A stretch of DNA of 64,000 nucleotides from Macrostomum hystrix (Eukaryota; Animalia; Platyhelminthes): NCBI GenBank assembly GCA_950097015.1, contig CATNEN010000032.1, forward strand, positions 1 to 64,000. The letters are read 5' to 3'. A program made the translations under genes and the position numbers. The notes under the pieces are model-generated. The model did not search any database, had not been told where the DNA came from, and saw only the letters and a list, made by a program, of their open reading frames with translations. Positions 3,500 to 52,284 of the stretch are shown piece by piece (within the stretch, counting starts at the first letter, position 1; each line of letters starts with the position of its first letter).

Positions 3500-3529
3500 G
3501 TTTCAGATGGCATGATGCTGAGAACATGC

Positions 3530-24507: not shown

Positions 24508-26641
24508 TGCCATGATTCAAACGCTGGTTTAGCCATGATTCAGACTCTGGTTTAGCCATGATTCATACTATGGTTTAGCCATGATTCAGACGCTGGTTTA
24601 GCCATGATTCAGACTCTGGTTTAGCCATGATTCAGACTCTGGTTTAGCCATGATGCAAACTCTGGTTTAGCCATGATTTTAACTCTGGTTTAGCCATGAT
24701 TCAAACTCTGGTTTAGCCATGATTCAGACGCTGGTTTAGCTATGATTTAAACTCTGTTTTAGCCATGATTCAGACTCTGGTTTTGCCATGATTCAGACTC
24801 TGGTTTAGCCATGATTCAGACTCTGGTTTAGCCATGATTCAGACTCTGGTTTAGCCATGATTCAGACCCTGGTTTAGCCATGATTCAAACTCTGGTTTAG
24901 CCATGATTCAGACTCTGGTTTAGCCATGATTTAAACTCTGTTTTAGCCATGATTCAGACCCTGGTTTAGCCATGATTCAAACTCTGGTTTAGCCATGATT
25001 CAGACTCTGGTTTTGCCATGATTCAGACTCTGGTTTAGCCATGATTCAGACTCTGGTTTAGCCATGATTTTAACTCTGGTTTAGCCATGATTCAAACTCT
25101 GGTTTAGCCATGATTCAGACGCTGGTTTAGCTATGATTTAAACTCTGTTTTAGCCATGATTCAGACTCTGGTTTAGCCATGATTCAAACTCTGGTTTAGC
25201 CATGATTCAAGCTCTGGTTTAGCCATGATTCAGACGCTGGTTTAGCCATGATTCAAGCTCTATTTTTGCCATGATTCAGACTCTAGTTTAGCCATGATTC
25301 AGACTCTGGTTTAGCCATGATTCAAACTCTGGTTTAGCCATGATTCAGACTCTGGTTTAGCCATGATTCAGACTCTGGTTTAGCCATGATGCAAACTCTG
25401 GTTTAGCCATGATTCAGACCCTGGTTTAGCCATGATTCAGACTCTGGTTTAGCCATGATTCAGACCCTGGTTTAGCCATGATTCAAACTCTGGTTTAGCC
25501 ATGATTCAGACTCAGGTTTAGCCATGATTTAAACTCTGTTTTAGCCATGATTCAGACCCTGGTTTAGCCATGATTCAAACTCTGGTTTAGCCATGATTCA
25601 GACTCTGGTTTAGCCATGATTCAGACGCTGGTTTAGCCATGATTCAGATTTAGACTCTGGTTTAGCCATGATTCAAACTCTGGTTTAGCCATGATTCAAA
25701 CTCTGGTTTAGCCATGATTCAGACTCTGGTTTAGCCATGATTCAAACTCTGGTTTAGCCATGATTCAGACCCTGGTTTAGCCATGATTCAAACTCTGGTT
25801 TAGCCATGATTCAGACTCTGGTTTAGCCATGATTTAAACTCTGTTTTAGCCATGATTCAGACCCTGGTTTAGCCATGATTCAAACTCTGGTTTAGCCATG
25901 ATTCAGACTCTGGTTTTGCCATGATTCAGACTCTGGTTTAGCCATGATTCAGACTCTGGTTTAGCCATGATTCAAACTCTGGTTTAGCCATGATTCAAGC
26001 TCTTGTTTAGCCATGATTCAGACGCTGGTTTAGCCATGATTCAAGCTCTATTTTTGCCATGATTCAGACTCTGGTTTAGCCATGATTCAGACTCTGGTTT
26101 AGCCATGATTCAAACTCTGGTTTAGCCATGATTCAGACTCTGGTTTAGCCATGATTCAGACTCTGGTTTAGCCATGATGCAAACTCTGGTTTAGCCATGA
26201 TTCAGACCCTGGTTTAGCCATGATTCAGACTCTGGTTTAGCCATGATTCAGACCCTGGTTTAGCCATGATTCAAACTCTGGTTTAGCCATGATTCAGACT
26301 CTGGTTTAGCCATGATTTAAACTCTGTTTTAGCCATGATTCAGACCCTGGTTTAGCCATGATTCAAACTCTGGTTTAGCCATGATTCAGACTCTGGTTTA
26401 GCCATGATTCAGACGCTGGTTTAGCCATGATTCAGATTCAGACTCTGGTTTAGCCATGATTCAAACTCTGGGTTAGCCATGATTCAAAATCTGGTTTAGC
26501 CATGATTCAAACTCTGGTTTAGCCATGATTCAGACTCTGGTTTAGCCATGATTCAAACTCTGGTTTAGCCATGATTCAAACTCTGGTTTAGCCATGATTC
26601 AAACTCTGGTTTAGCCATGATTCAAACGCTGGTTTTGCCAT
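24508..26641. repeat. 23-bp satellite, unit F, with a 788-bp internal duplication
   Basis: Markers TATTTTTGCC at 25261/26049 and GATTCAGATT at 25641/26429. Confidence 0.95.
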
Positions 26642-26883
26642 GAGAACTAATTTCCCCAGCAGCAGAGAACTAATTCCCCTCCAGCAGCAGAGAACTAATT
26701 TCCCCAGCAGCAGAGAACTAATTTCCCGAGCAGCAGAGAACTAATTCCCCCAGCAGCAGAGAACTAATTTCCCCAGCAGCAGAGAACTAATTTCCCGAGC
26801 AGCAGAGAACTAATTCCCCCAGCAGCAGAGAACTAATTTCCCCAGCAGCAGAGAACTAATTTCCCCAGCAGCAGAGAACTAAT
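26642..26883. repeat. Second 23-bp minisatellite (GAGAACTAATTTCCCCAGCAGCA)n, unit F
   Basis: About 10 copies directly visible. Confidence 0.95.
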
Positions 26884-28306
26884 GTTCTCCAAACAGAAGA
26901 GAACCTCCATAATACCAGAATGGAGGCTACTTGCAGGCTACCAAACTCGCAGCAAGAAATGTTTGCCCTTTTTCTTTGACAGGAAACCATTGCCCCCAAA
27001 TAGCATAGAAACGATGTGTCCATCGTTTTACTCAGCCCAGAAGGCAACAAATATCTCCTGTTACATCTCCTGTTACATGTGGCACGGTAGATACATTTAG
27101 AAAACTGTTAAACACATTTAGAAAATCGTTGGACACATTTAGAAAATCGTTGAGCACTTTAGAAAACGGTTTCGATCAGTGTTCGTCGAATAAAGTTTTA
27201 TAATTATTATTATTAAATAAGCTATTTTTTTGATAGAATAACGCTTTAAACAATGCTCAAAAAAAATTTGAAATAATTTACGCTCTTAGCTGCGCTCAAT
27301 ATTTTTTTCTTGCAGTTCTCAATTGTGATATCGCCTGCAGCTATGCACAAAAATATTTCCTTAGTTTTATTATCGAATTCCCGATACTCGAAAAAACTTA
27401 TACTATTTTCTGAAAGGGAGTACAGGAATAATAAAGCTAACAAATATCTGCTTCGACAGTAGCTAACCAAAATCGCTTACTATTTATACTCGAACCAAAA
27501 ATGCCCAAAAAGTACAAATAAATAGGAACTTACGTTTTTAACTGCTGATGATTAGAAGATTAAAAGAAAAAGAAGCAGTAACAAAACCGATGCTGAAATT
27601 CTACCTGCATTCTACAAAAGCATTAAAGTACTTTACTTCGGAGCTAGATGAAAAGAAAGCGGCACAATGATCGAAGTCGAGACAAGGTTTGACAATAGAA
27701 AGGCTGCAGTTTTATGGATAGAAAGGAGGAAGAGAGGTCTCGCTAGCATTGAGCATCATAAAAGCCCAATCATGAAATCTGATATGTACGTTTTGCGTAT
27801 TCAAATCAAATCACTCGATCAGCCAAGAGACAAATTTATAAACGTACGTACGGGTCGAAAAGCAGTGACGCAATCCTATTCAATTGAGAGTATCGGGCCC
27901 TGTTCTGTGCTATACCAATGCACGCGCGGGCGAGAAAAAGCACCGATGCAATCTAATAAAACTGACAGTGTCCGGCCCTATTCTAATTTAACCTTGTTTG
28001 GCCTCCTATTAAAAGCAATAGGAAAACTCGTTTTTCGAATATTTAATATTTTTAGCATTGAAGCAGACTAACGAAATTTTCAAGGTCTCATGCCAGTAAA
28101 ATTTGGCATGTTTAGCAAAAAACGCGATCAAATTTGGTTGAGGCATTTAGCCTGTGTATCGAAATTCCACAGACAGACAGACAGACAGACTTTAGAGATT
28201 TAGTATAGTTGGACTAGCAAGTTTTGCCCCCCTTCGGGGAGCAGAAATATTTTTAATTCGTCCAGTATACACTTTTTAGCAGCTGTATTTTTAGCCTTTT
28301 TTACGC

Positions 28307-29086
28307 TACAATGATCAGTTGACAATGATCCCCCAGTTGATAATGATCCCCCGGTTGACAATGGTCCCTCAGTCGACAATGATTCCCAGTTGATGATGAT
28401 CCCCCAGTTGACAATGATCCCCCAGTTGACAATGATCTGGGACAATGATCCCCCAGTTGACAATGGTCCCCCAGTCGACAATGATTCCCCAGTTGACAAT
28501 GATCCCCCAGTTGATGATGATCACCCAGTTGACAATGATCCCCGAGTTGATGATGATCTCCCAGTTGACCATGATCCCCCATTTGATGATGACTCCCAAA
28601 CGATGATGATCCCCATTTGACAATGATCCCCAGTTGACCATGATCCCCCATTTGATGATGATTCCCCAGTGTACAATTATCCCACAGTTGACGATTATCC
28701 CCCAGTTCTGGTTTAGCTTTGATTCAAACTCTGGTTTAGCCATGATTCAGACTCTGGTTTAGCCATGATATAAACTCTGGTTTAGCCATGATTCAGACGC
28801 TGGTTGGCCATGATTCAAACGCTGGTTTAGCCATGATTCAAACTCTGGTTTAGCCATGATTCAAACTGTGGTTTAGCCATGATTCAAACTCTTGTTTAGC
28901 CATTATTCAAACTCTGGTTTTGCCATGAATCAAACTTAAATTTAGCCATGATTCAGACTCTGGTTTAGCCATGATTTGAGCTCTGGTTTAGCCATGATTC
29001 AGACTCTGGCTTAGAATGATTCAGACTCTGGTTTAGCCATGATTCAAACTCTGGTTTAGCCATGATTCAAACGCTGGTTTTGCCAT
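28307..29086. repeat. Short 18-bp array (28307-28705) followed by short 23-bp array (28706-29086), unit G
   Basis: Monomers directly visible, more degenerate than in B-D. Confidence 0.93.
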
Positions 29087-29487
29087 GAGAACTAATTTTC
29101 CCAGCAGCAGAGAACTAATTCCCCCAGCAGCAGAGAACTAATTTTCCCAGCAGCAGAGAACTAATTCCCCCAGCAGCAGAGAACTAATTCCCCCAGCAGC
29201 AGAGAACTAATTTCCCCTGCAGCAGAGAACTAATTTCCCCAGCAGCAGAGAACTAATTTCCCCAGCAGCAGAGAACTAATTCCCCCAGCAGCAGAGAACT
29301 AATTTCCCCAGCAGCAGAGAACTAATTCCCCCAGCAGCAGAGAACTAATTCCCCCAGCAGCAGAGAACTAATTTCCCCAGCAGCAGAGAACTAATTCCCC
29401 CAGCAGCAGAGAACTAATTTCCCCAGCAGCAGAGAACTAATTTCCCCAGCAGCAGAGAACTAATTTCCCCAGCAGCAGAGAACTAAT
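29087..29487. repeat. Second 23-bp minisatellite (GAGAACTAATTTCCCCAGCAGCA)n, unit G
   Basis: About 17 copies directly visible. Confidence 0.95.
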
Positions 29488-31228
29488 GTTCTCCAAACAG
29501 AAGAGAACCTCCATAATACCAGAATGGAGGCTACTTGCAGGCTACCAAACTCGCAGCAAGAAATTTTTGCCCTTTTTCTTTGACAGGAAACCATTGCCCC
29601 CAAATAGCATAGAAACGATGTGTCCATCGTTTTACTCAGCCCAGAAGGCAACAAATATCTCCTGTTACATCTCCTGTTACATGTGGCACTGTAGATACAT
29701 TTAGAAAACTGTTAAACACATTTAGAAAATCGTTGGACACATTTAGAAAATCGTTGAGCACTTTAGAAAACGGTTTCGATCAGTGTTCGTCGAATAAAGT
29801 TTTATAATTATTATTTTTAAATAAGCTATTTTTTGATCGAATAACGCTTAAAACAATGCTCAAAAAATAGAATAATTTGAAATAATTTACGCTCTTAGCT
29901 GCGCTGAATACTTTTTTCTTGCAGTTCTCAATTGTGATAACGCCTGCAGCTATGCACAAAAATATTTCCGAAGTTTTATTATCGAATAAAACTTGCTGCT
30001 TTACTCGAAAACGAATACTATTTTCTGAAAGCGAGTACAGGAATAATAAAGCTAACAAATATCTGCTTCGACAGTAGCTAACCAAAATCGCTTACTTATA
30101 CTTACTCGTATTTATACTCGAACCCAAAAATGCCCAAAAAATACTAATAAACAGGAGCTTACGTTTTTTACTGCTGATGATTAGAAGATTAGAAGAAAAA
30201 GAAGCAGTAACAAAACCGATGCTGAAATTCTACCTGCATTCTACAAAAGCATTAAAGTACTTTACTTCGGAGCTAGATGATTAAAGTACTTTACTTCGGA
30301 GCTAGATGAAAAGAAAGCGGCACAATGATCGAAGTCGAGACAAGGTTTGACAATAGAAAGGCTGCAGTTTTATGGATAGAAAGGAGGAGGAGAGGTCTCG
30401 CTAGCATTGAGCATCATAAAAGCCCAATCATGAAATCTGCTATGTACGGTTTGCGTATTCAAATCAAATCACTCGATCAGCCAAGAGACAAATTTATAAA
30501 CGTACGTACGGGTCGAAAAGCAGTGACGCAATCCTATTCAATTGAGAGTATCGGGCCCTGTTCAGTGCTATACCAATGCACGCGCGGGCGAGAAAAAGCA
30601 CCGATGCAATCTAATAAAACTTACAGTGCCCGGACCTATTCCAATTTAACCTTGTTTGGCCTCCTATTGAAAGCAATAGGAAAAATCGTTTTTCGAATAT
30701 TTAATATTGTTAGCATTGAAGCAGACTAACGAAATTTTCAAGGTCTCATGCCAGTAAAATTTGGCATGTTTAGCAAAAAACGCGATCAAATTTGGTTGAG
30801 GCATTTAGCCTGTGCATCGAAATTCCACAGACAGACAGACAGACAGACAGACAGACTTTAGAGATTTAGTATAGTTGGATTATTATAAATAGCTCTATTC
30901 AAGCATTGAACGTGTGAGTGATGTCATAAGTTGCCATCATGCAAATTTCAAGCCTAAAAAGGCTGAAACTATGCAGAACCGATTTAGCGCAAATTCACAT
31001 TAAAATAACTTTATTCAATAAACCAGGAGATTGCCCTTAATTTGAATTCCGTGCTGATCCGATTACATAGAACGAGCTCGTAGTGCCAAACAAAAATATG
31101 TTCAATCATGCAATAAAAAATTCTTAAGTTGCAATTCTGTAAGTTCTTTTAAAAAAGGAAATAAAGATTAAAAAAGAGCTGCTCAAACAAGTTCACACTC
31201 GTACGCGGGATTTAAAAAAAATCACACC

Positions 31229-34200
31229 TTACGCATCGCCAGCACTGGTCATGAGACCGATCTGCTGCTTGAGTGCATTGGTCAGTTCAAGGCTCAGTCG
31301 CATCGCACGCCTGCAGTAGCCGCCGAGCTCGCCGAAGCGACCGTCACGAGCCGCAGCCAGCAATGGCTCAGGATTGAAATGCAGCGAAATGTCGCACACG
31401 GGCTGCGGCTCCGTCTGAGTGTCTCCGCCCATGTGCAGCGAGCCGATAGTGACGCAAACCATCGGCCATGCACCTTCGTCTGGCCGGTGGAATCGTCGGA
31501 CAATAGAACGCTCCCGTCTAGCCAAAACAATGACGGACTTTGGCACCCGATCGCTGACAACAACTTTGCCAGTTCCCGGATCCCGAGCCAAATAGGGAAA
31601 CTCCTCACCGTCCGGGAACAATGCTCGGTGCATGTCGGACCCGGCTTGCAATGGCCGGCATGCCGTCAAGCCGATGCGCATGTCCAGCAGTTCCTGATAC
31701 CCAGCCTCTGCAACGAACCGTCCAGCCTCACTGTCATTCTGAACCTCGTCACCAGTTGCGCGCGTGACTTCACTCTCACCAGCAGCAGCTTTCTGTTCCG
31801 TTGTTCGCCCCTCCTTCCTGCGTGCGGATGTGTATTTTTTGTTTCGTTTCTTCTTGCCTTGGCGATTGACTTCGTTTTCAGTAGATTCACTGCGACTCGC
31901 GGTAACCGTATCTTGCTGTATATTCATCACGCCTGTACCTTTGCTGAGTTTCGCGATCTCATTTAGTGAGTCTCTCTCCCCAGGTCTATCCGAGTCAAGA
32001 ATATTGGCGTAGATGCAATTCAGTGGACGCTCATAGACGCGAACGAGACGCAACTCGAGATCATGCTGGAGGTGCACCTCGTATGAAGCGCTGAGTCTGA
32101 CAGACACTTTCCAACCTGTCACAAATTTCTGTTGCACCTCAGTCGTCTCAATGAATTTCAAAGATTTGAGTGCCTTCTCATAAACCTTCACGATGGTGTC
32201 GGTGCGGAGCTTCTTTAGGTCAGCCGCTATTCCCGCCAGAAATCCGACGCCTAGACGATATCGCTTTCGATGGCGTGGCTTTGCAGCCTTTTCTAGTTGA
32301 ATCGGTAACGATGCACCTCGGAGCTTGTCATTTGGGTTTCCTAGACTGACCATTGGCTCATTGCAGGACGAAGCTGCGGCGGCTTCAGGAGCGGCCCGGT
32401 GTATAAACTCGCTTCGCTCACTTCGCTTGCGGAACTTCCGGCCAGCAGCCAAAGCTGCAGAGAGCTCAGAAATGGAAAGGCTTCTCCGACCTTCAGGAAG
32501 GCCGGAAGTTGTGTTTAAAAAGTAAATTCGGCCTGGGCGAACTGAAAACTCTAAGTCGCTTACAAGAGACAATTGAGGCTCAGTTGATTTTGACTGTCGC
32601 AGACGAATGAATTGAGAGCACACGAGATTAAATAGACGACGCGCTGCTTCATCGGCCCAGGTAGCCATGTCGACTCCATCAGTTCCTAACAGCAGAGGAA
32701 CGCAAGTATCATGCAGTCGATGTTCTGCGTTAACTAAATCGAAGTAGTCTCGCAGCTCGACTCTGCAACTGTCCGACAAGCATCGTGTGCCTAAAATTAT
32801 CCCGCCACCCTCCAAGAAGTAGGGATTAGTGTTTCTGTACTTTCTTGTCCAGTTGCCTGACAAGCCAAATCTAGAAGCCAGCTCGCGAAGCTCCGTACGA
32901 AGCCGATCAATAGCTGAGGGGGCTCCGGAAGCTCGCAAGAAAAGACGACGTGAGCCGGTAATCTCTTCGAGGTGCAGAGCATCGCACCCAGTTGTCAAGC
33001 GCAAGCGAATTTCGTGAAACTGTAAAGAACGCATCATTTCGTCGCTAAGAAGTCCAGGTAAACGTTGAGTTAGTCGAACAGCACGACCTGAGCGACCAGA
33101 CATAGCGCGTACTAAGGACAAGAGAGCAGCCGCGTCATGACTGTAAGTGAGACAGCGGATAGCTATATTTGCTAGCTCAGCAGCACCACGAACAACTTCA
33201 GCTGTAATGTGGACCTCAGGAGCCGATTTAACTTTCTTCCACGTGTATCTTACGAAATCATTTAGCTCTGTACACGAGCGAAAGAATTGAAGCATATAGC
33301 TGCCGATTCTTGCAAAGTTTGCCTCGATGTCACAATTCAGTCGATCAACCAGCAGGGCCAAATGCTCTGTCAACGGCAAGTCAATTAGGTCCGGATCATC
33401 TCCATCTGTGTCGCAATCTGGCAGGCAATACAACATCAGTGCATAAAACTCCGCAGTCGGCATCAGAGCCTGAGAGTCATCTGCTGACGGCACAATACCA
33501 GCCGCCCTGGCCCACTGAACCAGCAGCCGGAACAGGGGAAGTCGCCAGGGAGAGCGACTGTACAAGCTCAGCAGATGGCGCGTCTTGCCGAGCCCGATAT
33601 GGTTCATAGTGACATCACACTGTTGACCCTCATCTATGTCTTCGCCTCCATCCAGACACAGGCGACATCGAATCAGAGGAACTTCTCTGTCTAGATGGCG
33701 AGTCTTCTCTAGCACTGAGGCATCCAAAGCAGGCCAAACAAGTGTCTCAAGCCAGTGACGGTGACAATTGACTTCTCCCAATACAGCAACCTCTACAGGC
33801 AGAAATGATTCTGAAGTTGCCTTCGGTTGGGGCAGTACGCACAGATCAATATCGGATACGTTCTCGTCACACAGAAAAATTGATGCTGAGCCATAGACCC
33901 TGCATTTTAGAACTCCGGGACAGTGTAGAGACAGCCGGCCGTCCACCAATGCGGCGGCAGCATCGGCTCGCCCAACGGCATCACGCAAGCCTTGGAGTGA
34001 ATCGCGAAAGTAGGCGAAGACGGAGCGACCGATAGAGGTCTCAATACCTCCTCCTACTTGGCTCCCTTGAAGAGCTGTGTCTGTCAGTGGTGATTGGACA
34101 GTCATCGAGTGTGCACGAATGTCACACAAAACATCGCTTATGACCCATGGGAAGCTGAGACCTCGTGGTTTCATTTTCTGTTTATGCAAATCTTGGTTAC

Positions 34201-37200
34201 GGTATGCAACGGAAAACCATGCTGCTGCCTGCGCCCTCCGCTGATCGTGATTATCGCCAGCGAGTTGATCGAAAATACGTCGATACTTGTTTCCTAGCGC
34301 TTCAAAGGCAAGTCGCATAGCAGTATGAGCCCGACCACGCTCGGCTCGAAGCAGAGGATGCCACTGAAAGCAGCGACCGAGCTCAAATTCTCGTTCATTC
34401 TTGGTACCCCACTGAGCCATCAGTGCACGCAGATCACACCGGTAGAGTTGGTGCAATCGTTGAGCGCTGTTTAAAAAAAATTCATGACCAGGCCACGTAA
34501 CTTCGAACCGTTCGTTGCTACAATTGCTGACATCCAAGATATCCCAGTCGAGGTCGCATGAACAGCATCTTCGATACAGCTGGCCCAACAACTTCTCAGA
34601 GGAGTAAGATACTGAGCGCTCCATAAAATCCGGATAGCCTTTCCCTTGCACTAGTTTTACTGCCCTTTCAGGAACCTCAGGAACGATCCCAGTCTTTGGA
34701 AAGTCAACTGCTATCGACTGCGCACTTGCAACTTTGATTGCAAGCTGGTTGAGGGCTCCACCAGGCAGTTGGTCACAGACGGCCAGATGCAAATTCGCCA
34801 CTCGACCTAGAAAACTGTTGGCAAAGTTTTGGGCACAGAAGGTGGCCAGTCTCTCAGGATCCGTCACATTAGCTCCTTCAGGTAGCAGAGGCTCGCCTGC
34901 TGCCAGGTCGGCATAGTTTAAAGGCTTCTGAATTGCTTCTAGAGGTGGAATGAGTTCCGGATCCCATACAACTCCAAATTGGTCTCCATCGAGGTCCCCG
35001 CCACTACAGTCTGCAGCCAGAGAGCTGCTGCAATCAGACCTCGAGGGGAAAAGCAGCAGATTGATCCACCCTGCCAGTTCTGGACAGGACACTGCTCGCA
35101 CAACGCGGACGTCGCCTGGGTGAAGGCACGGGTTCCGATAAACCAGGACTGGGCCTTCAATCTGCTCGACTTGATCGCTTGGATGCCGCCTGATGCGTAG
35201 AAAGACCTCACCTTCACTCAGAACCTGTAGCGGATCAGGGGCAGCCATCACGCGGCAGCCGAGTTTGCCTACAGGCAGAGCCGCTCGCTTTCGAAGGTCC
35301 AAAAGACGAAAGCGGAACATGCAACGCAGCAGGCCGAGCCAGTGCGGATCAGTCAGCATGTCAAAGTGCTTTGCAACGTTCAGCACTCTAGATTTAGACG
35401 ATGCTGGTTGGTCGATGAAGTTGCAAAGTGCTGCAGCTGCATCAGCGGGATTCGCTAGCGCCTCGGCTGTCCTGCGGAGTTCCGAATCCAGAATGCTTCG
35501 CAGATGTTGCGCTGGATTCCAGTTTGAGCACTGATATGATAGTGCCTCCAACAGAGTTATGATTTCACGATTTAGGAACAGTGGACCACACTGATATGCT
35601 CCCACAATGCACAGTTTGTTATCCGAGCTCTCGAACTTCTCCGTCGATGGTCTCAGAGAGATGCCATGGTTTGAGCCAAGCTCTGGATCATCGTTCAATA
35701 CTGTTGTGAGGACTCCTTTTGCTCCAGCAAAGCGAAACTGATAGGCAGATGGAGTGTATGGCAGCTGAAGTTGAGCCGCGATGGAATCGGCAAGCGCCGT
35801 GCTGATTTTTCCACTACCTGAAATTTAAAAAAGAATTAATTACAACATTAGTACAGTAGCGTAACGTTTAAATGTTAGCGCAATGCAAAAATTCGAACTA
35901 ACCGTCTGTCACAAGATCATTGTTCCTTGCACGTCGGTCGGCGCATCTTGAAACTTGATGGTGCGCGAGTTCAGCCACTGGCGTGTCTGAAGTATGAAAA
36001 AGTCCCAAGCGAGAGAGATACTTGGATACTGAACGAAATTTATCCGGCTTCTCCACCAGTTGGTCTCGCAATCGCTGGACCTCCTCAATGGTTTCAGCGG
36101 CTACAAAGTAGCATCTGCTTGCCCGCAGCTGGCCACTGCTGGCCGAAAAAAATCGATAATGACGACCAGCCAGGAGCAGGCCATCGAGCAAGACGCGACG
36201 AAACCGATCTCCCACCAAAGCAGATGAGGCAACGTTGCCTCCACCCCGCACGGGTCCGCAGGACTCGTCAGTGAAGGCGACCAGGACGAGCCTGTCTGGA
36301 GGTATTCGACGAAGGAGGCGACTTGAAGCGACAGGAATAGCAGGAAACAGAACTACTCTGGTTGGAGTGACCGCCGCTCGCTTTACAAGCACGGAACCAG
36401 CAGGAACAAGAGAATCAGCCACAGCTTTGCCAGCATCATTCGCACCGTTCTCTAAAATGTTCAAGATTGAGCGCAATTTGCGTCCGAATACATCCGTTAG
36501 AAAGGCATTATGACCACTATCAGCTGAGAGCGCTAGAAGCGCATGAGACAGTCGAATAAGATTTTTCTGCCAGCTTTCGCCTGCGCCTGTGGCAGCGTCC
36601 GTGATTCGATTTGAAAGATTATTCGCAGCTTCTTTAGTGATGCAAAATTGACGACTATCGATCAGCGCTTGGGCTAGCCAGCGACACCCGAATTCTGCTT
36701 CAGAAGGTGCAGACAGGAATTCCGGCACGTGCGGGCAATGGAGAATGGGTGGCAATGGATCAGTTAAATGGCTGCCAGTCCCAAGGAGTTCCAGACGAGT
36801 ATCAAGCAGAGGCACTGGAAATGCTGCGCGTAGTCTCATCCAGTCGAGTGGCTCAGCCGACTCAGCAGCTGGCAGGTGCAAGATGAGTACAGGATTACTG
36901 TTGAGATGACGCCGAACTGTTTCATCGAGATCCGACTCTACAGATGCCGGATCAGAAAATATATCATTGAAAGTCCAATCGTTTATTGTTAGATCGTCGT
37001 TTCCTCTAGAAATTTTACTGACCGTGGGTGCAACTCGAATCGGTATGACCAGAAGTCCTTGTGACCAGTCAACGAATGCGAATCCATTGGTTCCAGCAGC
37101 AATTGACAAAGTCAACGAAATTTCACTTGCACCGAGAAAAACGGTTAGAAGACCTCGAGTCGAATCTATCTGAAGACTGACATTTCCTTCTGTGACTCTC

Positions 37201-40050
37201 AGCGATTCAACGAGCTTGATCTCTGTTTGAAACTGTCCCAAAGCGACACCGGTCAAGTTATGATCGCTCTTAATTGTTTCGCTGCTGTTATTATCGCCGG
37301 GAGAAGGTTCAGCTAGTCGGATATCAGGGATAAAAAAAAGAGGTCTACCTGCTATTCTAAAGGACCAGCAGCGTGCGAAAGAGTGATATGCAGACAGAAT
37401 AGGCTCTGCAGAAGCTGAAGTAAAGCACACGACTGCCGTGGTTGTATCAGGTGGGAAGACACCAGATGGCAGACAATTGTTTTCAGCATCATATTGCAGT
37501 AGATCAATACGGTGCACTTTTAAATGGCTTTTGGCTTCAATTTCCTCTTTTAGGTGGTCCTCCATATCTTTCGAGTCGAGTTGCAGCACAGAACTGTACA
37601 CTTGCACCACAAGTTGTCGCCCCATCGACCCGCCTACTTTTAGCAGGGGACGCGCCTCGATAGCTTGCACAGATTGGACAGTAAAATGCCTTACGACTTC
37701 TTTTGTCTTCTCAGAAGGAACGCCACTATTTAATGAATGTTCCTTTACCAATTCATTCAACAGTTTTTCTCTTTCGTGAAGCTCCTTAGCAGCAGCAGCC
37801 TCCTTTTCGTCTACAATTACAATGAAACGACTGTTCTTTTTGCGAGCTCGACCACGACTCTGCAATAGTTGCACAAGAGAATTCGGAGCGTCGAATCGAA
37901 CCACAATGTCGCATGCGCTGACGTCGAGACCCTCTTCAAGGACAGCCGTGCTCACAATTAGACGACTGAAGCCTTCGTTGAATTTACTCACAGCTACTGA
38001 CTGCTCGCCTTCCCAGTCCATGCCATCCGTGCCACCGCGTCCAACGACCAGCTGAGGCTTCAGACTCCGGAAGCGCTCAGACAGACGGGCGTGCACTAGA
38101 CGGGCAGTTCGTCGAGTCCAAGTCAGCACTAGGAGTCGGGACTCCTCATTCACGGACTCCAACGATGCAGCCTCCATCTCTAAAATCTGCATTCGCATAG
38201 ACACATCTTTGGCCCAGGAGGGGTCGGAGCGAAATTTCATTTTGTCGGAAGAAAGACAACGAAGATCTTGCAGAATTGCTTCTGCTTTAGCTACTCCAAC
38301 AACTTCGGACACTTCTATGGCGGCCAGAATGCAGAGGAGGTCGCGCATTTGCTCACGGTTTTGCCGAAACTGTGGTAAATCGCTGTAGATTAGGTTGCGT
38401 AACTGACCAGCTACATTTCGGAGTTGATTTCGCGGCAAAATCCCAGCTTTACCTAACGGTAGGCCAAAATCCAGTGAATTGTTACTTTCCCGAAGAACTT
38501 GCATCGCATCTTCAGAAAATTGAATTTGCAACTCCGTCTGACTGCACACCCGAATTTCAGTCTGAACTTGTTCTGCCGCCTCAGCTGCCTCGGTTGGACG
38601 GAGTGCGACGCAGTTCGATGAGAAGTGAGCCAGAAATGTTTGAAGCTTCTGAGCTCCCTCTTTAAGGCAATCTCCTGGTTCTACTGGGGATGCAGTTAAG
38701 CCAAGCAGGCGCGGTCGTCGACCATCGGGAAGTTTCCGGTGGACCGAAAGAACAGCTTGAAAGTTGTGACAGTAAGAATTAGCATGGTGACATTCGTCAA
38801 TAACTATGCAGGAAAATGCACTCAGGTCCGGTACACGTCGGTTCTTCAAGAGCGAAAGCAGGGCTCCTGCTGTGATCACAACCTGCGAATGTTGAAAGAA
38901 TTTCATTTTAGGTCTTCCTTCGCCATTATATCTTAAACAATATCGTGCAATAATGTAATAATGTACATTAAGTACATTTATCGTACACTACTTCCTTATG
39001 CTTGCATAATTGACCTCTATACGCACTCACAAAGTAGACCCAGCAATCAACATTTAACTGTAAATATTAATCAACCAAATCTAAGCTTGAGGGACAAACT
39101 ACAAACAATAATTTACTCAATTCAGCATGTGATTACGAGTAAGCTTATTAGATCTGAAAGATTCATAAGTAAAAGTCTATATCTGTCTCAAATTATATTC
39201 GCCACAAATTTTCGGATGATAAATCAACAGGCTGGTCATGAATAAGTAAGCTCCATCAACTCACTAGATCATGCGCTCCATCCAGTAGCTCCCGAATCTT
39301 CCAAGTCGTCATGTTCTCGCCACAGAGAGCGGCCACTCGAAGTCCAGTGTCCACCTCCAGCGCCTTCGCCTGCTGGAACACAAGCGGCACCCGCTCCACC
39401 AACAATGCGCCCATTAGGCCAGGGTTGATGGCCCGCATTCGAGCTAGTAGCAGAGCAGCTACCAGCGTCTTTCCTGAACCAGTTGGTAAAACCAGAACTA
39501 GATCTCTCTGCAAAGCTTCGGCAAAAGCTTCTATCTGGTACGGTCGGGGCACTTTTTCAGACGCCAGGAGGTCTGACCACTCAAAGTGCTCTGCAGTGGA
39601 AGCGAATCTAATAACAGCAGTTCGCGCAATTAAACTTGACCATCCGGTAAACTCAGAAACTATTGGTCGGCCATAGAAATTGCTCATATCCACCTGCTCT
39701 ATGACATGTCCAAATCTACGTATTAGTTTCACTGAAATTTTGTCTCTTGGTTCACAGCGGATGCCACCAACAATAACCTTCTTCTTTCCAAACGAGATGA
39801 AGTTAGAACCATGAGGTCCAAATGGAAGTTGAACTCCAACACTAGTCTGACAACTGCTGCAATTCACTACATACTTGGTCCCCTCTTTTTTAATGACCAG
39901 CTTTTTCATTGCTGCTTCAACGAACTGATTTTTTACCGATATGTATACTTCATTTTCAGCCTTCCTGAAGAAGCAAGCAAATTTAGCAGGCAATAAGCGC
40001 CTTCTACACAGGCCACAATCAATGCCAATTTCACTTTGTCGTGATGCCAT
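31229..40050 (-). CDS. Multidomain RNA-silencing protein: Zn module - Dicer/RIG-I-like helicase - cellular RdRP - Cid1/TUTase-like nucleotidyltransferase - KH-like - unknown C-terminus (predicted 2784 aa, 3 exons)
   Basis: Exons 40050-39265, 38882-35903, 35817-31229. Intron 1 (GTGAGT...TTCGCAG, 382 bp, phase 0) joins HDL|VVITAG, helicase motif Ib region. Intron 2 (GTTAGT...TTTCAG, 85 bp, phase 1) joins VTD-G-SGKIS, rebuilding the RdRP TDGxGxIS motif. Total CDS 8355 nt. Confidence 0.9.
33150..33960 (-). other. Pol-beta superfamily nucleotidyltransferase, Cid1/GLD-2/TUTase type
   Basis: VYGSASIFLCDENVSDIDLCV (GS + DxD), VPLIRC, QCDVTMNHIGLGKTRHLLSLY (third Asp), LPLFRLLVQWARAAGI, MPTAEFYALMLYCL, IGSYMLQFFRSC, in the order expected for this family. 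Confidence 0.8.
34110..36390 (-). other. Cellular (QDE-1/RDR/RRF-type) RNA-dependent RNA polymerase domain (spans intron 2)
   Basis: VTPTRV, SSRLLR, YRFFSASSGQLR, KYLSRLGLF, TDGSGKIS, AYQFRFAGAKGVL, RNPCLHPGDVR, SGGDLDGDQF (catalytic, about 34982-34996), AVDFPKTG, YPDFME, LLGQLYR, AAAWFSVAY, LSFPW. Confidence 0.95.
37810..39550 (-). other. SF2 DExD/H helicase domain, Dicer/RIG-I/DRH type (spans intron 1)
   Basis: PRPYQIEAF (Q), LPTGSGKT (I), VIDECHHA (II), GLTASP (III), STAVLEEGLDV (V), QSRGRAR (VI); all intact. Confidence 0.92.
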
Positions 40051-41317
40051 ACATTCTGAAAATTGTATGAAAATGAGGATTAAATTGAGAGCCAATCGTT
40101 GATAGCGATCTTATATGAGATGATATGATGAGTAAATGACTATATGACTAAAAATGTCCAAAAAAGATCATAAAAGTATACCTACTGAAACTATATCTTC
40201 ATTCTTCAATAAAAATATATATGTGGGAAACAAAGCTTCAATTAAATTTTTACTTCAATAATGAGTAGACTAGCACTAAATCATCTAGCGAAATTGCGAT
40301 TTTTGTTTAGAAGTGGGGACTAAGACAAAAATTTAATATAAATAACTTTACTAGAAAAGAGTTAATCATAAAAACTATAGGGTTTCAAAATTTATTTCGA
40401 AACTATTTCACAATTTATTTCGAAACTATTCAAAAATTTGTTTCGAGAAACTATTTCAAAATTTTTTTGAAACTATTTCGAAATCACAAAATAAGCTATA
40501 TCTGACACGCTATTGCATATAGATGCGACAAAATACTGAAATACTGTAGTTTTAGTGAATGCCTCAAAAGAATGCCTTAAATATTTAGTTACATATGCAC
40601 TACGATCATTATAATGTTCGATCCAAAACACAATTTGATTATTTTTGTGATATCTGTACCAGCAAGAAGTTGAAAAAATGTAATAAAATATGTAATGCTA
40701 CGTCTTAATTTATCAACAAAGTACGAATTCCCTCACGAAAACGAAAATTTTCGCTTTTGATATTTAAATTTTACACTAATCAAGTCATTTTGCTTCACTT
40801 AATCAAACTTTTCTGTCATATAAAATTTCAACACAATGGATTAACGTTATTTGTAGAGTGAACTGTTTTTAATATAATAAAAAACATAAATTTAAGCACG
40901 AAAACCCTACTCTACGAGTATAATATTAATTAAATTGAATGTGCAGAATCTGATTCGCGATGGTTGTCGTGCGAGAACATCTATAAACGCAGAATGCATT
41001 TTACTCGTATTTGTTACTAACTCTTACAATTCTGCTAGCCTTTACTAGCCTATATCTTAATGAATTACTAACTTGTTTCAATATAGAAGTCAACTTTTGC
41101 ACATGCTATTTTAGAATGTTTGTATGTTTACAAAAGTCTACTTGACACTGTACATCAACAAAGTAATAACTTGCGTTGCAATTGTACATATTCATTGTAG
41201 TTTTCAGTCCTTAAATTCCGGTCAATGGCGTCATCTTCCTAAAAAACCATATTTAAGTGACTGCTGCTAATTTGGGGTCCCTGACGGTATTACTTTGTCC
41301 GCTACCACTGCAGGCCA

Positions 41318-43773: not shown

Positions 43774-46218
43774 TTACTCAGCTTTGATGGCCTGCACTCC
43801 AATAGCAGAGATGGCTGCATTGATCTTGGTGGTAGCTGTTGGCCAGGCTGCTGCAAGAAGGCTCTTACTTACAAAGTTCTGAGTATTACCTAAAATGGGT
43901 ATTTAAAGTCGAATGTATTTACCATTTGAAGTTCCACATGCTCATTAAATATATTTTAGAGGACCAATAGATATTCACTTACCATTGCATACATTTGCCA
44001 CACTAGGCTGCATTGTGTAATATATGTCACTCCTCAACGATCCATCAACTACCTGCATCGGATATTGATCAGCTACATGAAAGTCTTCACAGGTTACAAA
44101 GTACTGAATACTTGAAGGCAGTGCAGTTGATGTCGAGCTTGGGCAGCAAGTGGCAAAGTTGGCACTGCAGTAGCTGTTAACAGCGTCTGTTAGGTAGGTT
44201 CTTGTCGTCTCTTTCATCAGAGTTCCATTCCACTAAAACAATAGGATAATATAATAAGCCTCTGTGGGTAGTCTCTCCATTGTCTCTATTCCAATTTCCC
44301 GAATATTTCAGATATTGTGGCTGTTCTTTCCAATTATTCAGATAAACATGAAATTTCCAATTTGATTGATAGGGTGCGTAGAAGTTATTTAAAACGTTTG
44401 CTTATAGGACCGAAGGGTTTTGACTTCTCCCAGTTAATGCAACAGGTTTTGCAGTACAGAAAAATGTTATCAGTTAATCACGTACATTGGAGTGTAAAAT
44501 TGAGCACTTACAATAGACATATACAGTGGATAGTAACTTGCATAGCGCACTTCTCCAGCGAAGTAGATGGCCAGGCTGTGCTCCTCTTGAATCTTGTTAA
44601 CTGTTATTGAAAAATATATTTAGGATGGGCGGATGTTAGCGTTATTTAGTCATCTACCACTCGTGATTACTGAAACAGAACTGATAGTTTATAAATTAAT
44701 TGTTTCATTGACTCACTCTCGCAACGATAACCTGCGAAGTTAGCTGGACAAACACACTTGCATGTGGTATCAAACATGGTTGGCGTGCCGCCATTTTTAC
44801 AAAACACAGCCTGAGCCTTGCAGTCATTGGGGATTGAGCTTGGAAAGTAGATGTTCTTAGCTGCAATTACAACGATTGTAAAACATTGAAGATTTAATTG
44901 CGTGTAGGTCAGATTTCTCTGCTAAAGATTCAAGATAAGTGAACTTCTTTGCTCAACCAGGCTTCGCTTACAAACGCGAGTGATAATAAATCTCCGCAGT
45001 AATACAATTACTTACTTTCACACCTGACGCCATAGTATCCAGCGGGGCAGGAGCACGAGCAGAACGGTGAAGCCACCAAAGTGCCATAGTTCATGCATTC
45101 CAGCTTGCACTCTGTAACACGGGTCATTTGTTTAGTGCTCCATAAAAATGCGTGAGTGAACAAGAAATCAGAACGCTTTTTAAAGTGGTTATATTGTGGG
45201 TTTAGGTTTAGGTACAGGAACAGAGGTAGGTGAGAAGAAGCGACATGGGGGATCTTTATTTTAACCAGTATATGGAAGTAGAGGCCGAGACTAAGACTGT
45301 CACCAAACCGAAGCGAACTGAAGTATGTCTCACCAAATGGTCCAGGTACTGGTGGTGTTTCTCCTACCAGGATGGCGTAGCAAAGACCTTCCTTATAGTA
45401 CGTTGCATAGCCGTTGCCGCATTTGGTTCCTGGTTCTCCAATTTGGTATGGTGGTGAGCTCCACTCCCTGTGTGCGGTTTCATATTCAGATAATAATGAC
45501 CAAGTTATTGTTTTAAGCGTCTCTACGTTTCGCAAAATATATTTGCCTGATACTCACCTATTAAACTCACAGGCTGCCATGTAGTTACCACTGCAGAATT
45601 GAATGCCGCAACCAACTTTGTTTACACCTGAGGTCGCTATCTGCAGGTAGTGTCCACAAGTAGAAAAGAATGGATATTTGCCTGCACCAACAGTGCAAAC
45701 GCCATCGGTGTGATTGTAGATTTCTCTCTCCAGAAACATGAAGACTAGAATCTCGCTGAAATTCTTTCTGGATCCGAGGTACAGAGTCTCGCCCAGAGAT
45801 GCGTATTCGCCGCCATAGTTGTGCGCAAACACGCAACTGTTGGCCGCTTTCTGGGCCAGGTTCTCCAAGTTTGTGTCCCACAGCTGGAATCGGAGAGTTT
45901 TTTTAGTTTTTTCACCTTTCTTATTTTGCTGCAAAATGCCAGTGGAGGATTTCAAATGACACCTTTTAAATGGACGCTTGTTTCGACACGAAAGGTTTTG
46001 TCACGCCTGTATTTGCGAATTTAAAGCTGCAAAAGTGCCTCAAAAGTTCTTACCAATCCGTTCATGTCGGCCGCGGGCGGTACAACGCTCTTTCTCAAAT
46101 GGTTAATAAACTTGATTGTGTCAGATTTTTCCTGCTCCGACAATTCGCACCTGCCAACGCTGCCGGTTAGGGTCAGGATTAGCGAAACGCACAGCCAGAC
46201 TGTGAAGGTGGAGTCCAT
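43774..46218 (-). CDS. Secreted CAP (SCP/TAPS, CRISP/VAL-like) protein with two EGF-like domains, paralogue 1, about 8 exons
   Basis: Exon 1 46218-46054 (signal peptide, NHLRKSVVPPAADMNGL); exon 2 45883-45558 (LWDTNLENLAQ, FAHN, GETLY, CGHYLQI, VGCG); then PPYQIGEPGTKC exon, EGF exons (CMNYG...CSCPAGYYGVRCE; CKNGG...CVCPANFAGYRCE) and three more exons to TAA at 43774. Coordinates of the 3' exons are approximate. Confidence 0.85.
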
Positions 46219-51760: not shown

Positions 51761-52284
51761 ATCGTAAAAAGCGGAAAATTTTGATTCAGATGGTGGACTT
51801 TCACGAAAATCGGTCTTCGGTTTGGGAGCTGTCGTGAAGTAGGCAGTGGGTATCTACAAGTTAGTAAAATACCCCCGTGCTCTTTCAACGTGGTCTTTCT
51901 ATTTTTAAAGAAACTTTCTTTTATTTATCCACTCGTAATTCCTTTAACAAAGGACAGAATGTCTGTAAACGGTGAAATTATTATTTCATTCTAATCTACT
52001 CTTAATGGATAGAATAGAAATTGGACCTAACCAAGTTGGGACCGGATGTTCAACCAGTGACAGCCGCAGCGGAGGACGCCCTACCAACCCGAAATACTAT
52101 CTTAGCTGGTAGCAAATCTGTAGCACTTAGGGAATTAAGTGTCGAGCTCAAGGACACAAATTGTCTCCATTGGGCTGAGATTCGAACTCCTGATCGAGCA
52201 TGTAGCACTAAAAGCTTTCAGCCAGCGTTTATCTGGTATGGATTCCCATCTCCGACCCTCATTAATCCTGTTTCAGCCGAAACA

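What the first reader, a model, noticed from the sequence alone, without database searches (positions are those of the whole stretch)
33150..33960. Catalytically intact Cid1/TUTase-like domain directly after the RdRP
Seen: YGS...SDIDLCV, a third Asp in QCDVT, and the helical motifs LFRLLVQWARAAGI and IGSYMLQFF, about 50 aa after the RdRP C-terminal LSFPW motif. Established: this family adds U, A or UG tails to RNA 3' ends. Inference: it may tail templates to prime or recruit the linked RdRP (pUG-like), or uridylate the products. Nucleotide preference cannot be read from the sequence, and I did not recognise a canonical nucleotide-recognition loop.
Basis: partly seen in the sequence, partly recalled or inferred. 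Interest (0 to 1): 0.78.

Follow-up and report, generated by a model that had tools for sequence, protein, structure and literature searches.

The report
RNA-tailing enzyme domain fused to RdRP
A flatworm-type gene encodes, on one spliced and expressed mRNA, an RNA-copying polymerase followed directly by an intact RNA-tailing (Cid1/TUTase-fold) domain. This tailing domain belongs to a branch found only in such helicase-polymerase-tailer fusion proteins, so partners that in yeast and ciliates are separate subunits are here one chain.

Summary

On the window sequence alone the domain is below Pfam threshold (PF22600, 13.6-16.7 bits against 27). An exhaustive search found 64 relatives. All 20 aligned full-length relatives carry RdRP, 18 a helicase C domain and 17 PF22600. 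A profile of 32 members hits GLD-2, TbTUT4, Tailor, CutA and Cid1 (E 1e-10 to 3e-6).

An AlphaFold model (pLDDT 89.8) matches Cid1-family enzymes at Z 18-20. OAS, cGAS and CD-NTases score 10-15. The GS motif and all three Asp are invariant in the 32-member alignment. dN/dS against Macrostomum lignano is about 0.08.

Contigs from four runs of one study splice out an 85-nt GT..AG intron and run unbroken through RdRP, tailing domain and tail.

It departs from canonical Cid1 enzymes in three ways: an invariant Lys replaces the conserved Asn, there is no PAP-associated or nucleotide-recognition signature, and a KH-like module follows.

The most likely function is tailing of RNA 3' ends handled by the adjacent RdRP. 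That function is untested.

The scan noted the same build on another piece of this genome (s1-408095). I found no paper describing it.

The parts
39265..40047 (-). Exon 1. Probable start ATG at 40047, a CxxC...CxxC N-terminal region, and helicase motif I (PTGSGKT).
   Evidence: ORF list. Pfam DEAD/ResIII on ORF aa 181-275. GTGAGT donor right after 39265. 73% identical to the M. lignano locus. The start codon is chosen by analogy with the family consensus M-x-C-x-x-C.
38883..39264 (-). Intron 1 (382 nt, GTGAGT..CAG), predicted.
   Evidence: Read from the sequence. It keeps the frame and restores the family consensus D-x-L-V-x-T-A-G. It was not checked with reads.
35903..38882 (-). Exon 2. Dicer/RIG-I-type helicase core (DECH, Helicase_C), a long linker, and the N-terminal part of the RdRP.
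   Evidence: Pfam Helicase_C 4.6e-12 and RdRP 3.8e-21. PDB hits AncD1D2 Dicer helicase 4.9e-27, DCL1, LGP2, RIG-I, MDA5.
35818..35902 (-). Intron 2 (85 nt, GT..AG), confirmed by transcript-derived contigs.
   Evidence: Contigs in all four runs skip 85 nt here, with CT..AC ends on the plus strand. The junction reads T-D-G-S-G-K-I-S in frame.
31229..35817 (-). Exon 3. One uninterrupted reading frame holding the RdRP C-terminal half, the nucleotidyltransferase, a KH-like module, a conserved extension and the C-terminal tail (stop at 31229-31231).
   Evidence: ORF of 1489 aa. Contigs in two runs (X2, X4) span 31100-35815 in one piece with 0 mismatches; X1 and X3 cover the same stretch in two or three pieces each.
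34145..36371 (-). RdRP domain (PF05183), spanning intron 2. The catalytic DLDGD is at 34982-34996 and the domain ends with LSFPW at 34145-34159.
   Evidence: Pfam 1.6e-74 and 3.8e-21. Motif positions.
33086..34054 (-). Cid1/TENT-fold nucleotidyltransferase domain (ORF aa 549-871): N-terminal helix, palm and helical central domain.
   Evidence: AlphaFold model, pLDDT 89.8. VIA-align Z 18-20 to CutA, GLD-2, mtPAP, TUT1, Cid1, TUT7 and TbTUT4 over model residues 5-327. Profile-PDB E 1e-10 to 3e-6. PF22600 in 31 of 32 family members.
33887..33892 (-). G603-S604 of the h-G-[GS] motif.
   Evidence: Invariant in 32/32 sequences, and 50 of 52 residues present in the 56-row alignment.
33845..33853 (-). 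D616-I-D618, the first two metal-binding aspartates.
   Evidence: D616 51/51, D618 49/50. There are 11 residues between the GS motif and the first Asp.
33614..33616 (-). D695, the third catalytic aspartate.
   Evidence: 54/54. It aligns with the third Asp of GLD-2, TbTUT4 and Tailor.
33584..33586 (-). K705, an invariant lysine where Cid1-family enzymes have the conserved Asn of their N-[TS] dipeptide.
   Evidence: 54/54 Lys. It aligns with the Asn of GVRNS in TbTUT4 and GFCNT in Tailor.
32834..33079 (-). KH-like module (ORF aa 874-955), beta-alpha-alpha-beta-beta-alpha, without a GXXG loop. Tentative.
   Evidence: Secondary-structure order in the model. Only weak, non-significant profile hits to hnRNP K KH3 (E 0.4-0.8). 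Conserved across the family.
32579..32833 (-). Conserved extension (ORF aa 956-1040) with invariant Y960 and H993 and a long terminal helix. Function unknown.
   Evidence: Invariant columns Y416 and H449 of alignment A2. Confidently modelled apart from one loop. No Pfam or PDB sequence match.
31232..32578 (-). C-terminal tail (ORF aa 1041-1489). It holds blocks conserved across phyla and a Lys/Arg-rich low-complexity stretch.
   Evidence: 59-66% identical to the M. lignano locus apart from the low-complexity part. Consensus blocks seen in the 20-protein alignment. No Pfam hit.

Best explanation
Nt 33086-34054 (minus strand) encode a genuine Cid1/TENT-fold terminal nucleotidyltransferase domain that is expressed and under selective constraint. 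It is translated as part of one protein of about 2780 residues: N-terminal Cys-rich region, Dicer/RIG-I-type helicase, cellular RdRP, nucleotidyltransferase, KH-like module, conserved tail. The domain belongs to a distinct branch that I found only in this fusion architecture. Named members come from flatworm, acoel, hydrozoans, scyphozoans, a sponge, dinoflagellates, a chrysophyte and a diplonemid. Shown here: the fold, the intact metal-binding triad, the single reading frame and mRNA, the conservation, and the recurrence of the architecture. Inferred: the domain adds untemplated nucleotides to the 3' ends of RNAs handled by the neighbouring RdRP. The most likely substrate is the template, whose tail would then recruit, position or prime the polymerase. 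The separate nucleotidyltransferase subunits of RdRP complexes are the model for this: Cid12 in fission yeast, Rdn1/Rdn2 in Tetrahymena, Cid1/Cid2 in Paramecium, and RDE-3 in C. elegans. The helicase would feed or remodel the RNA. Which nucleotide is added cannot be read from the sequence, because the pocket is non-canonical: Lys replaces the conserved Asn, and there is no recognisable nucleotide-recognition motif.
For: Motifs and a single ORF shared with the RdRP. Spliced contigs from four runs of one study remove the 85-nt GT..AG intron and cover RdRP, NTase and tail without a mismatch, in a single contig in two of the runs. The exhaustive phmmer search gave 64 relatives. Of 20 full-length relatives, 20 have RdRP, 18 Helicase_C and 17 PF22600. 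Seven of 17 short hits carry a literal RdRP motif (LSFPW-like or DxDGD); the start sequences of four more (P0007, P0023, P0026, P0043) look like RdRP C-terminal consensus by my own reading; six show no RdRP mark. Homologues pass Pfam thresholds for PF22600 and PF01909, and 31 of 32 members hit PF22600. Profile against PDB: GLD-2 1.1e-10, TbTUT4 8.8e-10, Tailor 7e-9, CutA 3e-8, Cid1 3e-6. Model pLDDT 89.8, pTM 0.83. Foldseek probability 1.0 to CutA, Cid1, TUT7 and GLD-2. Z 18-20 for Cid1-family enzymes, 17-18 for canonical PAP, 10-15 for CD-NTase, OAS and cGAS. Catalytic columns are invariant. dN/dS against M. lignano is 0.08 for the NTase, 0.12 for the RdRP and 0.57 for the linker. Literature on RdRP-nucleotidyltransferase complexes: PMC4066745, PMC9276528.
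Against: No enzymatic activity, RNA tail or small RNA was examined. The window's own sequence misses the Pfam gathering score. The domain lacks the PAP-associated signature PF03828 and the usual nucleotide-recognition motif. An invariant Lys replaces the Asn that, from my own knowledge of Cid1-family structures, contacts the incoming nucleotide, so the substrate or chemistry may differ from known TUTases and PAPs. dS against M. lignano is saturated (1.5-3.1), so the dN/dS values are rough. The sequencing runs are not on record as RNA; that they are is inferred from the exact intron removal. All expression evidence comes from one study.
Confidence: 0.7

Rival explanations
1. The domain is active but works on the products rather than the templates. 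It would add a few nucleotides to the 3' ends of RdRP-made strands or of small RNAs, marking them for stabilisation, decay, Dicer entry or Argonaute loading.
For: The fold and catalytic evidence is the same as for the main explanation. The nearest structural neighbours include Tailor, TUT4/7 and URT1, which tail small-RNA precursors and mRNAs. The domain lies C-terminal to the RdRP.
Against: Nothing here distinguishes template from product. In the one system where this was studied biochemically (Tetrahymena RDRC, cited in PMC4066745) the associated uridyltransferase tails the template.
Confidence: 0.18
2. The domain is a non-catalytic scaffold or RNA-binding module. It would keep the fold only to hold RNA or to brace the RdRP, as the inactive N-terminal nucleotidyltransferase modules of TUT4/7 or the NF45/NF90 DZF domains do.
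For: Sub-threshold Pfam score on the window sequence. No PF03828 or nucleotide-recognition motif. The conserved Asn is replaced. NF90/NF45 and Utp22 appear among fold matches at Z 15-16.
Against: GS and all three Asp are invariant in sequences that share only 20-30% identity, which inactive relatives do not usually keep. dN/dS is as low as in the RdRP. Active enzymes score higher than the inactive folds.
Confidence: 0.07
3. The domain is a messenger synthase of the OAS/cGAS/CD-NTase kind. The double-stranded RNA made next door would switch it on, and it would emit an oligonucleotide or cyclic-nucleotide signal rather than tail RNA.
For: It shares the superfamily fold. It is fused to an RLR-type helicase, a class used in RNA sensing. 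OAS1 and CD-NTases are found at Z 13-15.
Against: These families score 5-9 Z units below Cid1-type enzymes. All significant sequence-profile hits are terminal transferases or poly(A) polymerases. Pfam assigns PF22600/PF01909 and never Mab21 or OAS.
Confidence: 0.05

Closest known systems
Cid1/GLD-2/TUT-type non-canonical terminal nucleotidyltransferases (TENTs: Cid1, GLD-2, CutA, TUT1, TUT4/7, Tailor, URT1, trypanosome TUTases)
   Same: Same two-lobed fold (Z 18-20, rmsd 3.1-4.8 A, 250-280 aligned residues). Same h-G-S, D-x-D and third-Asp catalytic motifs. Same helix after the palm carrying a basic residue (W-A-R here, W-A-K / W-S-K in GLD-2 and TbTUT4).
   Different: Sequence identity is only 11-19%. 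No member hits the PAP-associated domain PF03828. An invariant Lys replaces the conserved Asn of the N-[TS] dipeptide. A W-P-x-x-G-x-P consensus stands where the nucleotide-recognition motif would be. It is always covalently joined to an RdRP and followed by a KH-like module. A single-sequence search reached no canonical TENT at E <= 0.001, so this is a separate branch. A tree against named Cid1, Cid12, RDE-3 and Rdn sequences could not be built, because no tool supplied those sequences.
RNA-directed RNA polymerase complexes with separate subunits: S. pombe RDRC (Rdp1, Hrr1, Cid12), Tetrahymena RDRC (Rdr1 with Rdn1 or Rdn2), Paramecium Rdr1/Cid1 and Rdr2/Cid2
   Same: The same three activities are combined: RdRP, nucleotidyltransferase and helicase (PMC4066745; PMC9276528). 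The RdRP keeps its DLDGD site.
   Different: Here the three are one polypeptide on one mRNA. The helicase is of the Dicer/RIG-I SF2 type, not the ZNFX-1-like Hrr1 type (PMC9276528). In that respect it resembles the Dicer-related helicase DRH-3, which partners C. elegans RdRPs (my own knowledge). Whether the nucleotidyltransferase is specifically related to Cid12 or Rdn1/2 is untested.
Dictyostelium RrpA/RrpB/RrpC
   Same: [quoted passage not shown]
   Different: No nucleotidyltransferase domain is described for them in the papers read. I could not fetch their sequences to see whether they carry the C-terminal module found here.
C. elegans RDE-3 (MUT-2) pUG tailing
   Same: A nucleotidyltransferase whose tails turn RNA fragments into RdRP templates (my own knowledge; mentioned in PMC9276528).
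   Different: RDE-3 is a separate protein. Fontenla et al. found no RDE-3 orthologue in flatworms (PMC5594548). Nothing here shows UG specificity.

Membership tests
Cid1/TENT-type terminal RNA nucleotidyltransferases (Pol-beta superfamily) | h-G-[GS] followed after 9-13 residues by [DE]-h-[DE]-h, plus a third carboxylate on a later strand | tested here: met
   Y-G-S at aa 602-604, then 11 residues, then D616-I-D618-L. Third Asp is D695. These columns are invariant in 32 sequences.
Cid1/TENT-type terminal RNA nucleotidyltransferases (Pol-beta superfamily) | Palm (catalytic) lobe plus helical central lobe with the Cid1-family topology | tested here: met
   Model pLDDT 89.8. Z 18-20 to CutA, GLD-2, MEAT1, TUT1, TUT7 and Cid1 over residues 5-327. 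These rank above canonical PAP, CCA-adding enzyme, OAS and cGAS.
Cid1/TENT-type terminal RNA nucleotidyltransferases (Pol-beta superfamily) | Pfam PF22600/PF01909 at the curated threshold | tested here: inconclusive
   The window sequence scores 13.6-16.7 bits against a cut-off of 27. Homologues score 47.6 and 41.2 bits. 31 of 32 members match at E <= 0.01. The Macrostomum branch is long.
Cid1/TENT-type terminal RNA nucleotidyltransferases (Pol-beta superfamily) | PAP-associated domain signature (PF03828) with a nucleotide-recognition motif | tested here: not met
   No PF03828 hit in any of the 32 members. Profile-PDB alignments stop before that region. The family consensus there is W-P-x-x-G-x-P.
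Cid1/TENT-type terminal RNA nucleotidyltransferases (Pol-beta superfamily) | Conserved Asn-[Thr/Ser] after the third Asp, which contacts the incoming nucleotide | tested here: not met
   Lys705 in 54 of 54 sequences, followed by Thr, Ala or Ser. It aligns with the Asn of TbTUT4 and Tailor.
Cid1/TENT-type terminal RNA nucleotidyltransferases (Pol-beta superfamily) | Template-independent nucleotide addition to RNA 3' ends | not testable with these tools
   Needs a biochemical assay.
RdRP complex (RDRC-like) machinery | Cellular RdRP (PF05183) with an intact D-x-D-G-D site | tested here: met
   Pfam 1.6e-74. DLDGD at ORF aa 235-239.
RdRP complex (RDRC-like) machinery | Physical association of a nucleotidyltransferase with the RdRP | tested here: met
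   Covalent: same ORF and same spliced transcript contigs. The same order is seen in 17 of 20 full-length homologues at E <= 0.001.
RdRP complex (RDRC-like) machinery | Associated helicase of the Hrr1/ZNFX-1 type | tested here: not met
   The helicase is present but of the Dicer/RIG-I type: AncD1D2 4.9e-27, DCL1, LGP2, RIG-I.
RdRP complex (RDRC-like) machinery | Required for RdRP-dependent small-RNA production | not testable with these tools
   Needs knock-down and small-RNA sequencing.
OAS/cGAS/CD-NTase messenger synthases | Closest sequence and structure neighbours are Mab21, OAS or CD-NTase enzymes | tested here: not met
   Z 10-15 against 18-20 for Cid1-type enzymes. No such sequence or Pfam hits.

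The most novel reading that the evidence does not exclude
The protein is a self-contained, single-chain RNA-silencing amplifier of ancient eukaryotic origin. Its nucleotidyltransferase branch has a rebuilt nucleotide pocket (Lys for Asn, no recognition motif). It would write a particular kind of tail on target RNA fragments, and the adjacent RdRP would read that tail as its start signal, with the Dicer-type helicase delivering the RNA. If so, the separate-subunit complexes of yeast, ciliates and nematodes would be dispersed versions of one coupled mechanism. Macrostomum would then be an RNAi-tractable animal in which tailing and copying can be studied in one molecule.
Probability: 0.3. Interest if true: 0.8.

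Novelty: new variant of a known kind. Interest (0 to 1): 0.62.

Why it matters
How cellular RdRPs choose and start on their templates is still unclear (PMC4066745 says so explicitly). In every studied system a nucleotidyltransferase is genetically or physically tied to the RdRP, but always as a separate protein. A natural fusion found in flatworms, acoels, cnidarians, a sponge and several protist lineages argues that tailing and copying are mechanically coupled. It also offers one polypeptide for biochemistry and structure work.

It bears on flatworm biology too. Macrostomum is reported as the only flatworm with RdRPs and to lack an RDE-3 orthologue (PMC5594548). The tailing activity may simply sit inside the RdRP gene.

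The altered nucleotide pocket marks a branch of terminal transferases whose specificity is unknown.

Tried and rejected
- **Single-sequence searches were weak.** Pfam gave PF22600 at only 13.6-16.7 bits. PDB phmmer gave only GLD-2 at E 0.32. The word-based protein search gave one hit, the M. lignano protein.
- **The first AlphaFold run failed.** With a two-sequence alignment the model had pLDDT 33 and was discarded.
- **No standalone relatives found.** A word-based search with the 32-sequence NTase alignment, aimed at standalone enzymes of 180-580 aa, found nothing.
- **The suggested phylogeny was not done.** A tree against named Cid1, Cid12, GLD-2, TUT4/7, RDE-3 and Rdn1/2 needs their sequences, and no tool supplied them.
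- **Nucleotide preference is unresolved.** Model coordinates are not exposed to scripts, so pocket residues could only be placed through HMM alignments. These disagree by one residue around the base-stacking position.
- **The KH-like module is only tentative.** PDB profile hits to hnRNP K KH3 are at E 0.4-0.8 and there is no Pfam hit.
- **Distance correlation is only moderate.** Pairwise identities of the RdRP and NTase parts correlate at Spearman 0.50. This is compatible with co-inheritance but is not a test of it.
- **Literature.** No paper found describes the helicase-RdRP-nucleotidyltransferase fusion. The Burroughs, Ando and Aravind 2014 review, the most likely place for it, is not held.
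Full report
**What is in the sequence**

The finding lies inside a 1489-codon minus-strand ORF, 31229-35698. Its first 377 residues match the C-terminal two thirds of the cellular RdRP family PF05183 (E 1.6e-74), with the catalytic DLDGD at residues 235-239.
- YGS at 602-604
- SDIDLCV at 615-621
- QCDVT at 693-697
- LFRLLVQWARAAGI at 722-735
- IGSYMLQFF at 798-806

The RdRP-terminal LSFPW is at 514-518. The GS motif therefore lies 84 residues downstream of it, and the domain's first helix about 34 residues downstream. No stop codon or frame change separates RdRP and nucleotidyltransferase.

**Gene structure and expression**

An upstream ORF (35898-38906) carries a DECH helicase core, Helicase_C and the first 165 positions of the RdRP profile. 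A further ORF (39256-40095) carries helicase motif I. The sequence between the ORFs has consensus splice sites that keep the frame.

Contigs from four public runs of one study match the locus without a single mismatch. They skip exactly 85 nt, 35818-35902, with GT..AG on the minus strand. In two runs (X2, X4) one contig runs unbroken from 31100 to 35815; in X1 and X3 the same stretch is covered by two or three contigs. The runs are not labelled as RNA. Precise intron removal, and total contig sizes of only about 47 Mb, indicate transcriptome data.

RdRP, nucleotidyltransferase and tail are thus on one spliced mRNA. Intron 1 (39264-38883) is predicted only. By coordinate arithmetic the coding sequence is about 8.35 kb, or about 2783 residues.

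**Is the domain a real nucleotidyltransferase?**

On its own the window sequence is weak evidence. PF22600 scores 13.6-16.7 bits against a threshold of 27, and GLD-2 scores E 0.32 in PDB. I therefore ran the exhaustive HMMER search. It returned 64 relatives.

Relatives pass the Pfam thresholds (PF22600 at 47.6 and 41.2 bits, plus PF01909). 31 of 32 aligned members hit PF22600. A profile of the 32 sequences gave these significant PDB matches:

| PDB family | E-value |
|---|---|
| GLD-2 | 1.1e-10 |
| T. brucei TUT4 | 8.8e-10 |
| Tailor | 7e-9 |
| CutA | 3e-8 |
| Cid1 | 3e-6 |
| MEAT1, TUT4/7, URT1, Trf4 | weaker but significant |

With a 56-sequence alignment AlphaFold gave a confident model (pLDDT 89.8, pTM 0.83). 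A two-sequence alignment had failed.

Foldseek and VIA-align place residues 5-327 of the model on Cid1-family enzymes, with rmsd 3.1-4.8 A over 250-280 residues. An all-against-representatives search gives a clear gradient:

| Family | Z |
|---|---|
| Cid1-type terminal transferases | 18-20 |
| Canonical poly(A) polymerase | about 17.8 |
| Trf4 | 16.2 |
| NF90/NF45 | 15.9 |
| CD-NTases, CCA-adding enzyme, OAS1 | 13-15 |
| cGAS-like receptors | 10-13 |

A protein-language-model search also returns only NTP_transf_2 / MTPAP-like / PAP_assoc clusters.

**Conservation**

Across 32 sequences that share 20-30% identity with the window protein, the invariant columns are G603, S604, S615, D616, D618, D695, G702 and K705, plus W820 and three residues further on. 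In the 56-row alignment the counts are D616 51/51, D618 49/50 and D695 54/54.

The M. lignano locus is 69% identical across this exon. Against it, Nei-Gojobori dN/dS values are:

| Region | dN/dS |
|---|---|
| Nucleotidyltransferase | 0.08 |
| RdRP half | 0.12 |
| KH-like part | 0.11 |
| Linker between RdRP and NTase | 0.57 |

dS is saturated, so these values are rough. They still show that the domain is as constrained as the polymerase.

**How it differs from known Cid1-family enzymes**

- No member hits the PAP-associated domain PF03828.
- The profile-PDB alignments end before the nucleotide-recognition region. The family consensus there is W-P-x-x-G-x-P.
- The conserved Asn of the N-[TS] dipeptide that follows the third Asp (GVRNS in TbTUT4, GFCNT in Tailor) is an invariant Lys here. 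From my own knowledge of Cid1-family structures, that Asn contacts the incoming nucleotide.
- The position of the base-stacking aromatic is ambiguous in the HMM alignments.

Downstream of the domain, the model shows a beta-alpha-alpha-beta-beta-alpha unit with type I KH topology but no GXXG loop. Only non-significant hits to hnRNP K KH3 support this. A further conserved extension follows, and the tail beyond it also has blocks conserved across phyla.

**The architecture recurs**

All 20 full-length relatives carry RdRP, 18 carry Helicase_C and 17 carry PF22600 at E <= 0.001, in the same order. Among 17 short hits from short contigs, seven carry a literal RdRP C-terminal motif (LSFPW-like or DxDGD). 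Four more (P0007, P0023, P0026, P0043) start with sequence that, by my own reading, resembles RdRP C-terminal consensus. Six show no RdRP mark, so a standalone form is not excluded for those. No canonical standalone TENT reached E 0.001.

Named members:
- Flatworm: Macrostomum lignano
- Acoel: Convolutriloba macropyga
- Hydrozoans: Hydra vulgaris (three loci), Hydractinia symbiolongicarpus
- Scyphozoans: Rhopilema esculentum, Sanderia malayensis
- Sponge: Oopsacas minuta
- Dinoflagellates: Effrenium voratum, Prorocentrum/Polarella
- Chrysophyte: Dinobryon divergens, with an extra dsRNA-binding domain
- Diplonemid: Sulcionema specki

All named records are called 'uncharacterized', 'unnamed', 'hypothetical', or simply 'RNA-directed RNA polymerase'. 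In a tree of the domain the Macrostomum pair sits on a long branch, which explains the sub-threshold Pfam score.

The helicase is of the Dicer/RIG-I type: AncD1D2 4.9e-27, DCL1, LGP2, RIG-I and MDA5.

**Mechanism**

Shown here: an intact, constrained, expressed Cid1-fold transferase covalently tied to an intact RdRP and a Dicer-type helicase.

Inferred: it tails RNA 3' ends for the neighbouring polymerase. The basis is the repeated pairing of RdRPs with separate nucleotidyltransferases:
- Cid12 with Rdp1 and Hrr1 in fission yeast.
- Rdn1 or Rdn2 with Rdr1 in Tetrahymena, where the uridyltransferase's template-tailing activity influences initiation.
- Cid1 and Cid2 with Rdr1 and Rdr2 in Paramecium (all in PMC4066745; Hrr1 and Cid12 also in PMC9276528).
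- RDE-3 pUG tailing in C. elegans (my own knowledge).

Rival readings are product tailing, a non-catalytic scaffold and a messenger synthase. They are ranked lower for the reasons given in their entries.

**Novelty**

Fontenla et al. reported four RdRPs in M. lignano and no RDE-3 orthologue. They do not mention a nucleotidyltransferase domain in the RdRP genes (PMC5594548). Pinzon et al. surveyed animal RdRPs and noted only an AAA_12 domain in one amphioxus protein (PMC6396948). Dictyostelium Rrp proteins are described as helicase plus RdRP (PMC3661229).

No paper I could search describes the three-part fusion or this transferase branch. The 2014 Burroughs-Ando-Aravind review could not be read. 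The domain combination is visible in precomputed Pfam annotations, so it is undescribed rather than hidden.

This scan also noted the whole-gene fusion on this window (s1-268078). A paralogue on another piece of the same genome (s1-408095) has a follow-up that reached the same view.

**Verdict**

The functional interpretation is plausible but untested. I class it as a new variant of a known kind.

Noticed in passing
window 26500-30730: A tandem duplication of about 2.6 kb lies just downstream of the gene's 3' end. It holds arrays of a 23-nt satellite and two nearly identical 134-codon ORFs (27667-28071 and 30325-30729; 95-99% identical copies).
   Followed up: partly
window 31232-32578 (minus strand): The C-terminal tail after the nucleotidyltransferase and KH-like module has sequence blocks conserved from flatworm to cnidarians and protists, for example V-R-F-G-x-F-Y-L and E-R-P-x-x-W-x-H. 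It has no Pfam or PDB match and its function is unknown.
   Followed up: partly
window 39600-40047 (minus strand): A Cys-rich N-terminal region (CxxC ... CxxC) precedes the helicase and is conserved in the 20-protein alignment. I did not test that; Pfam gave nothing significant.
   Followed up: no
L001 7298-16648 (M. lignano contig NIVC01001144.1): The deposited M. lignano gene model BOX15_Mlig023635g1 (1486 aa) is truncated. The contig encodes the helicase exons upstream and the conserved tail downstream, colinear with the window gene. The alignment breaks at window exon-3 residues 1075-1078, and about 1 kb of extra sequence sits in the low-complexity part.
   Followed up: partly
P0124 (Dinobryon divergens, 3298 aa): This family member carries an additional dsRNA-binding domain (PF00035) according to the precomputed Pfam list.
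   Followed up: no
window 45008-45955 (minus strand): Two adjacent ORFs are rich in conserved cysteines and end in an EGF-like C-x-C-P-x-G-Y-x-G-x-x-C motif. This may be an exon pair of a secreted CAP/EGF-type protein.
   Followed up: no
window 1-4000, 52001-54000 and 62001-64000: G+C rises to 0.54-0.55 in the first two stretches, against about 0.40-0.45 elsewhere. GC skew is strongly negative (-0.43) in the last 2 kb.
   Followed up: no
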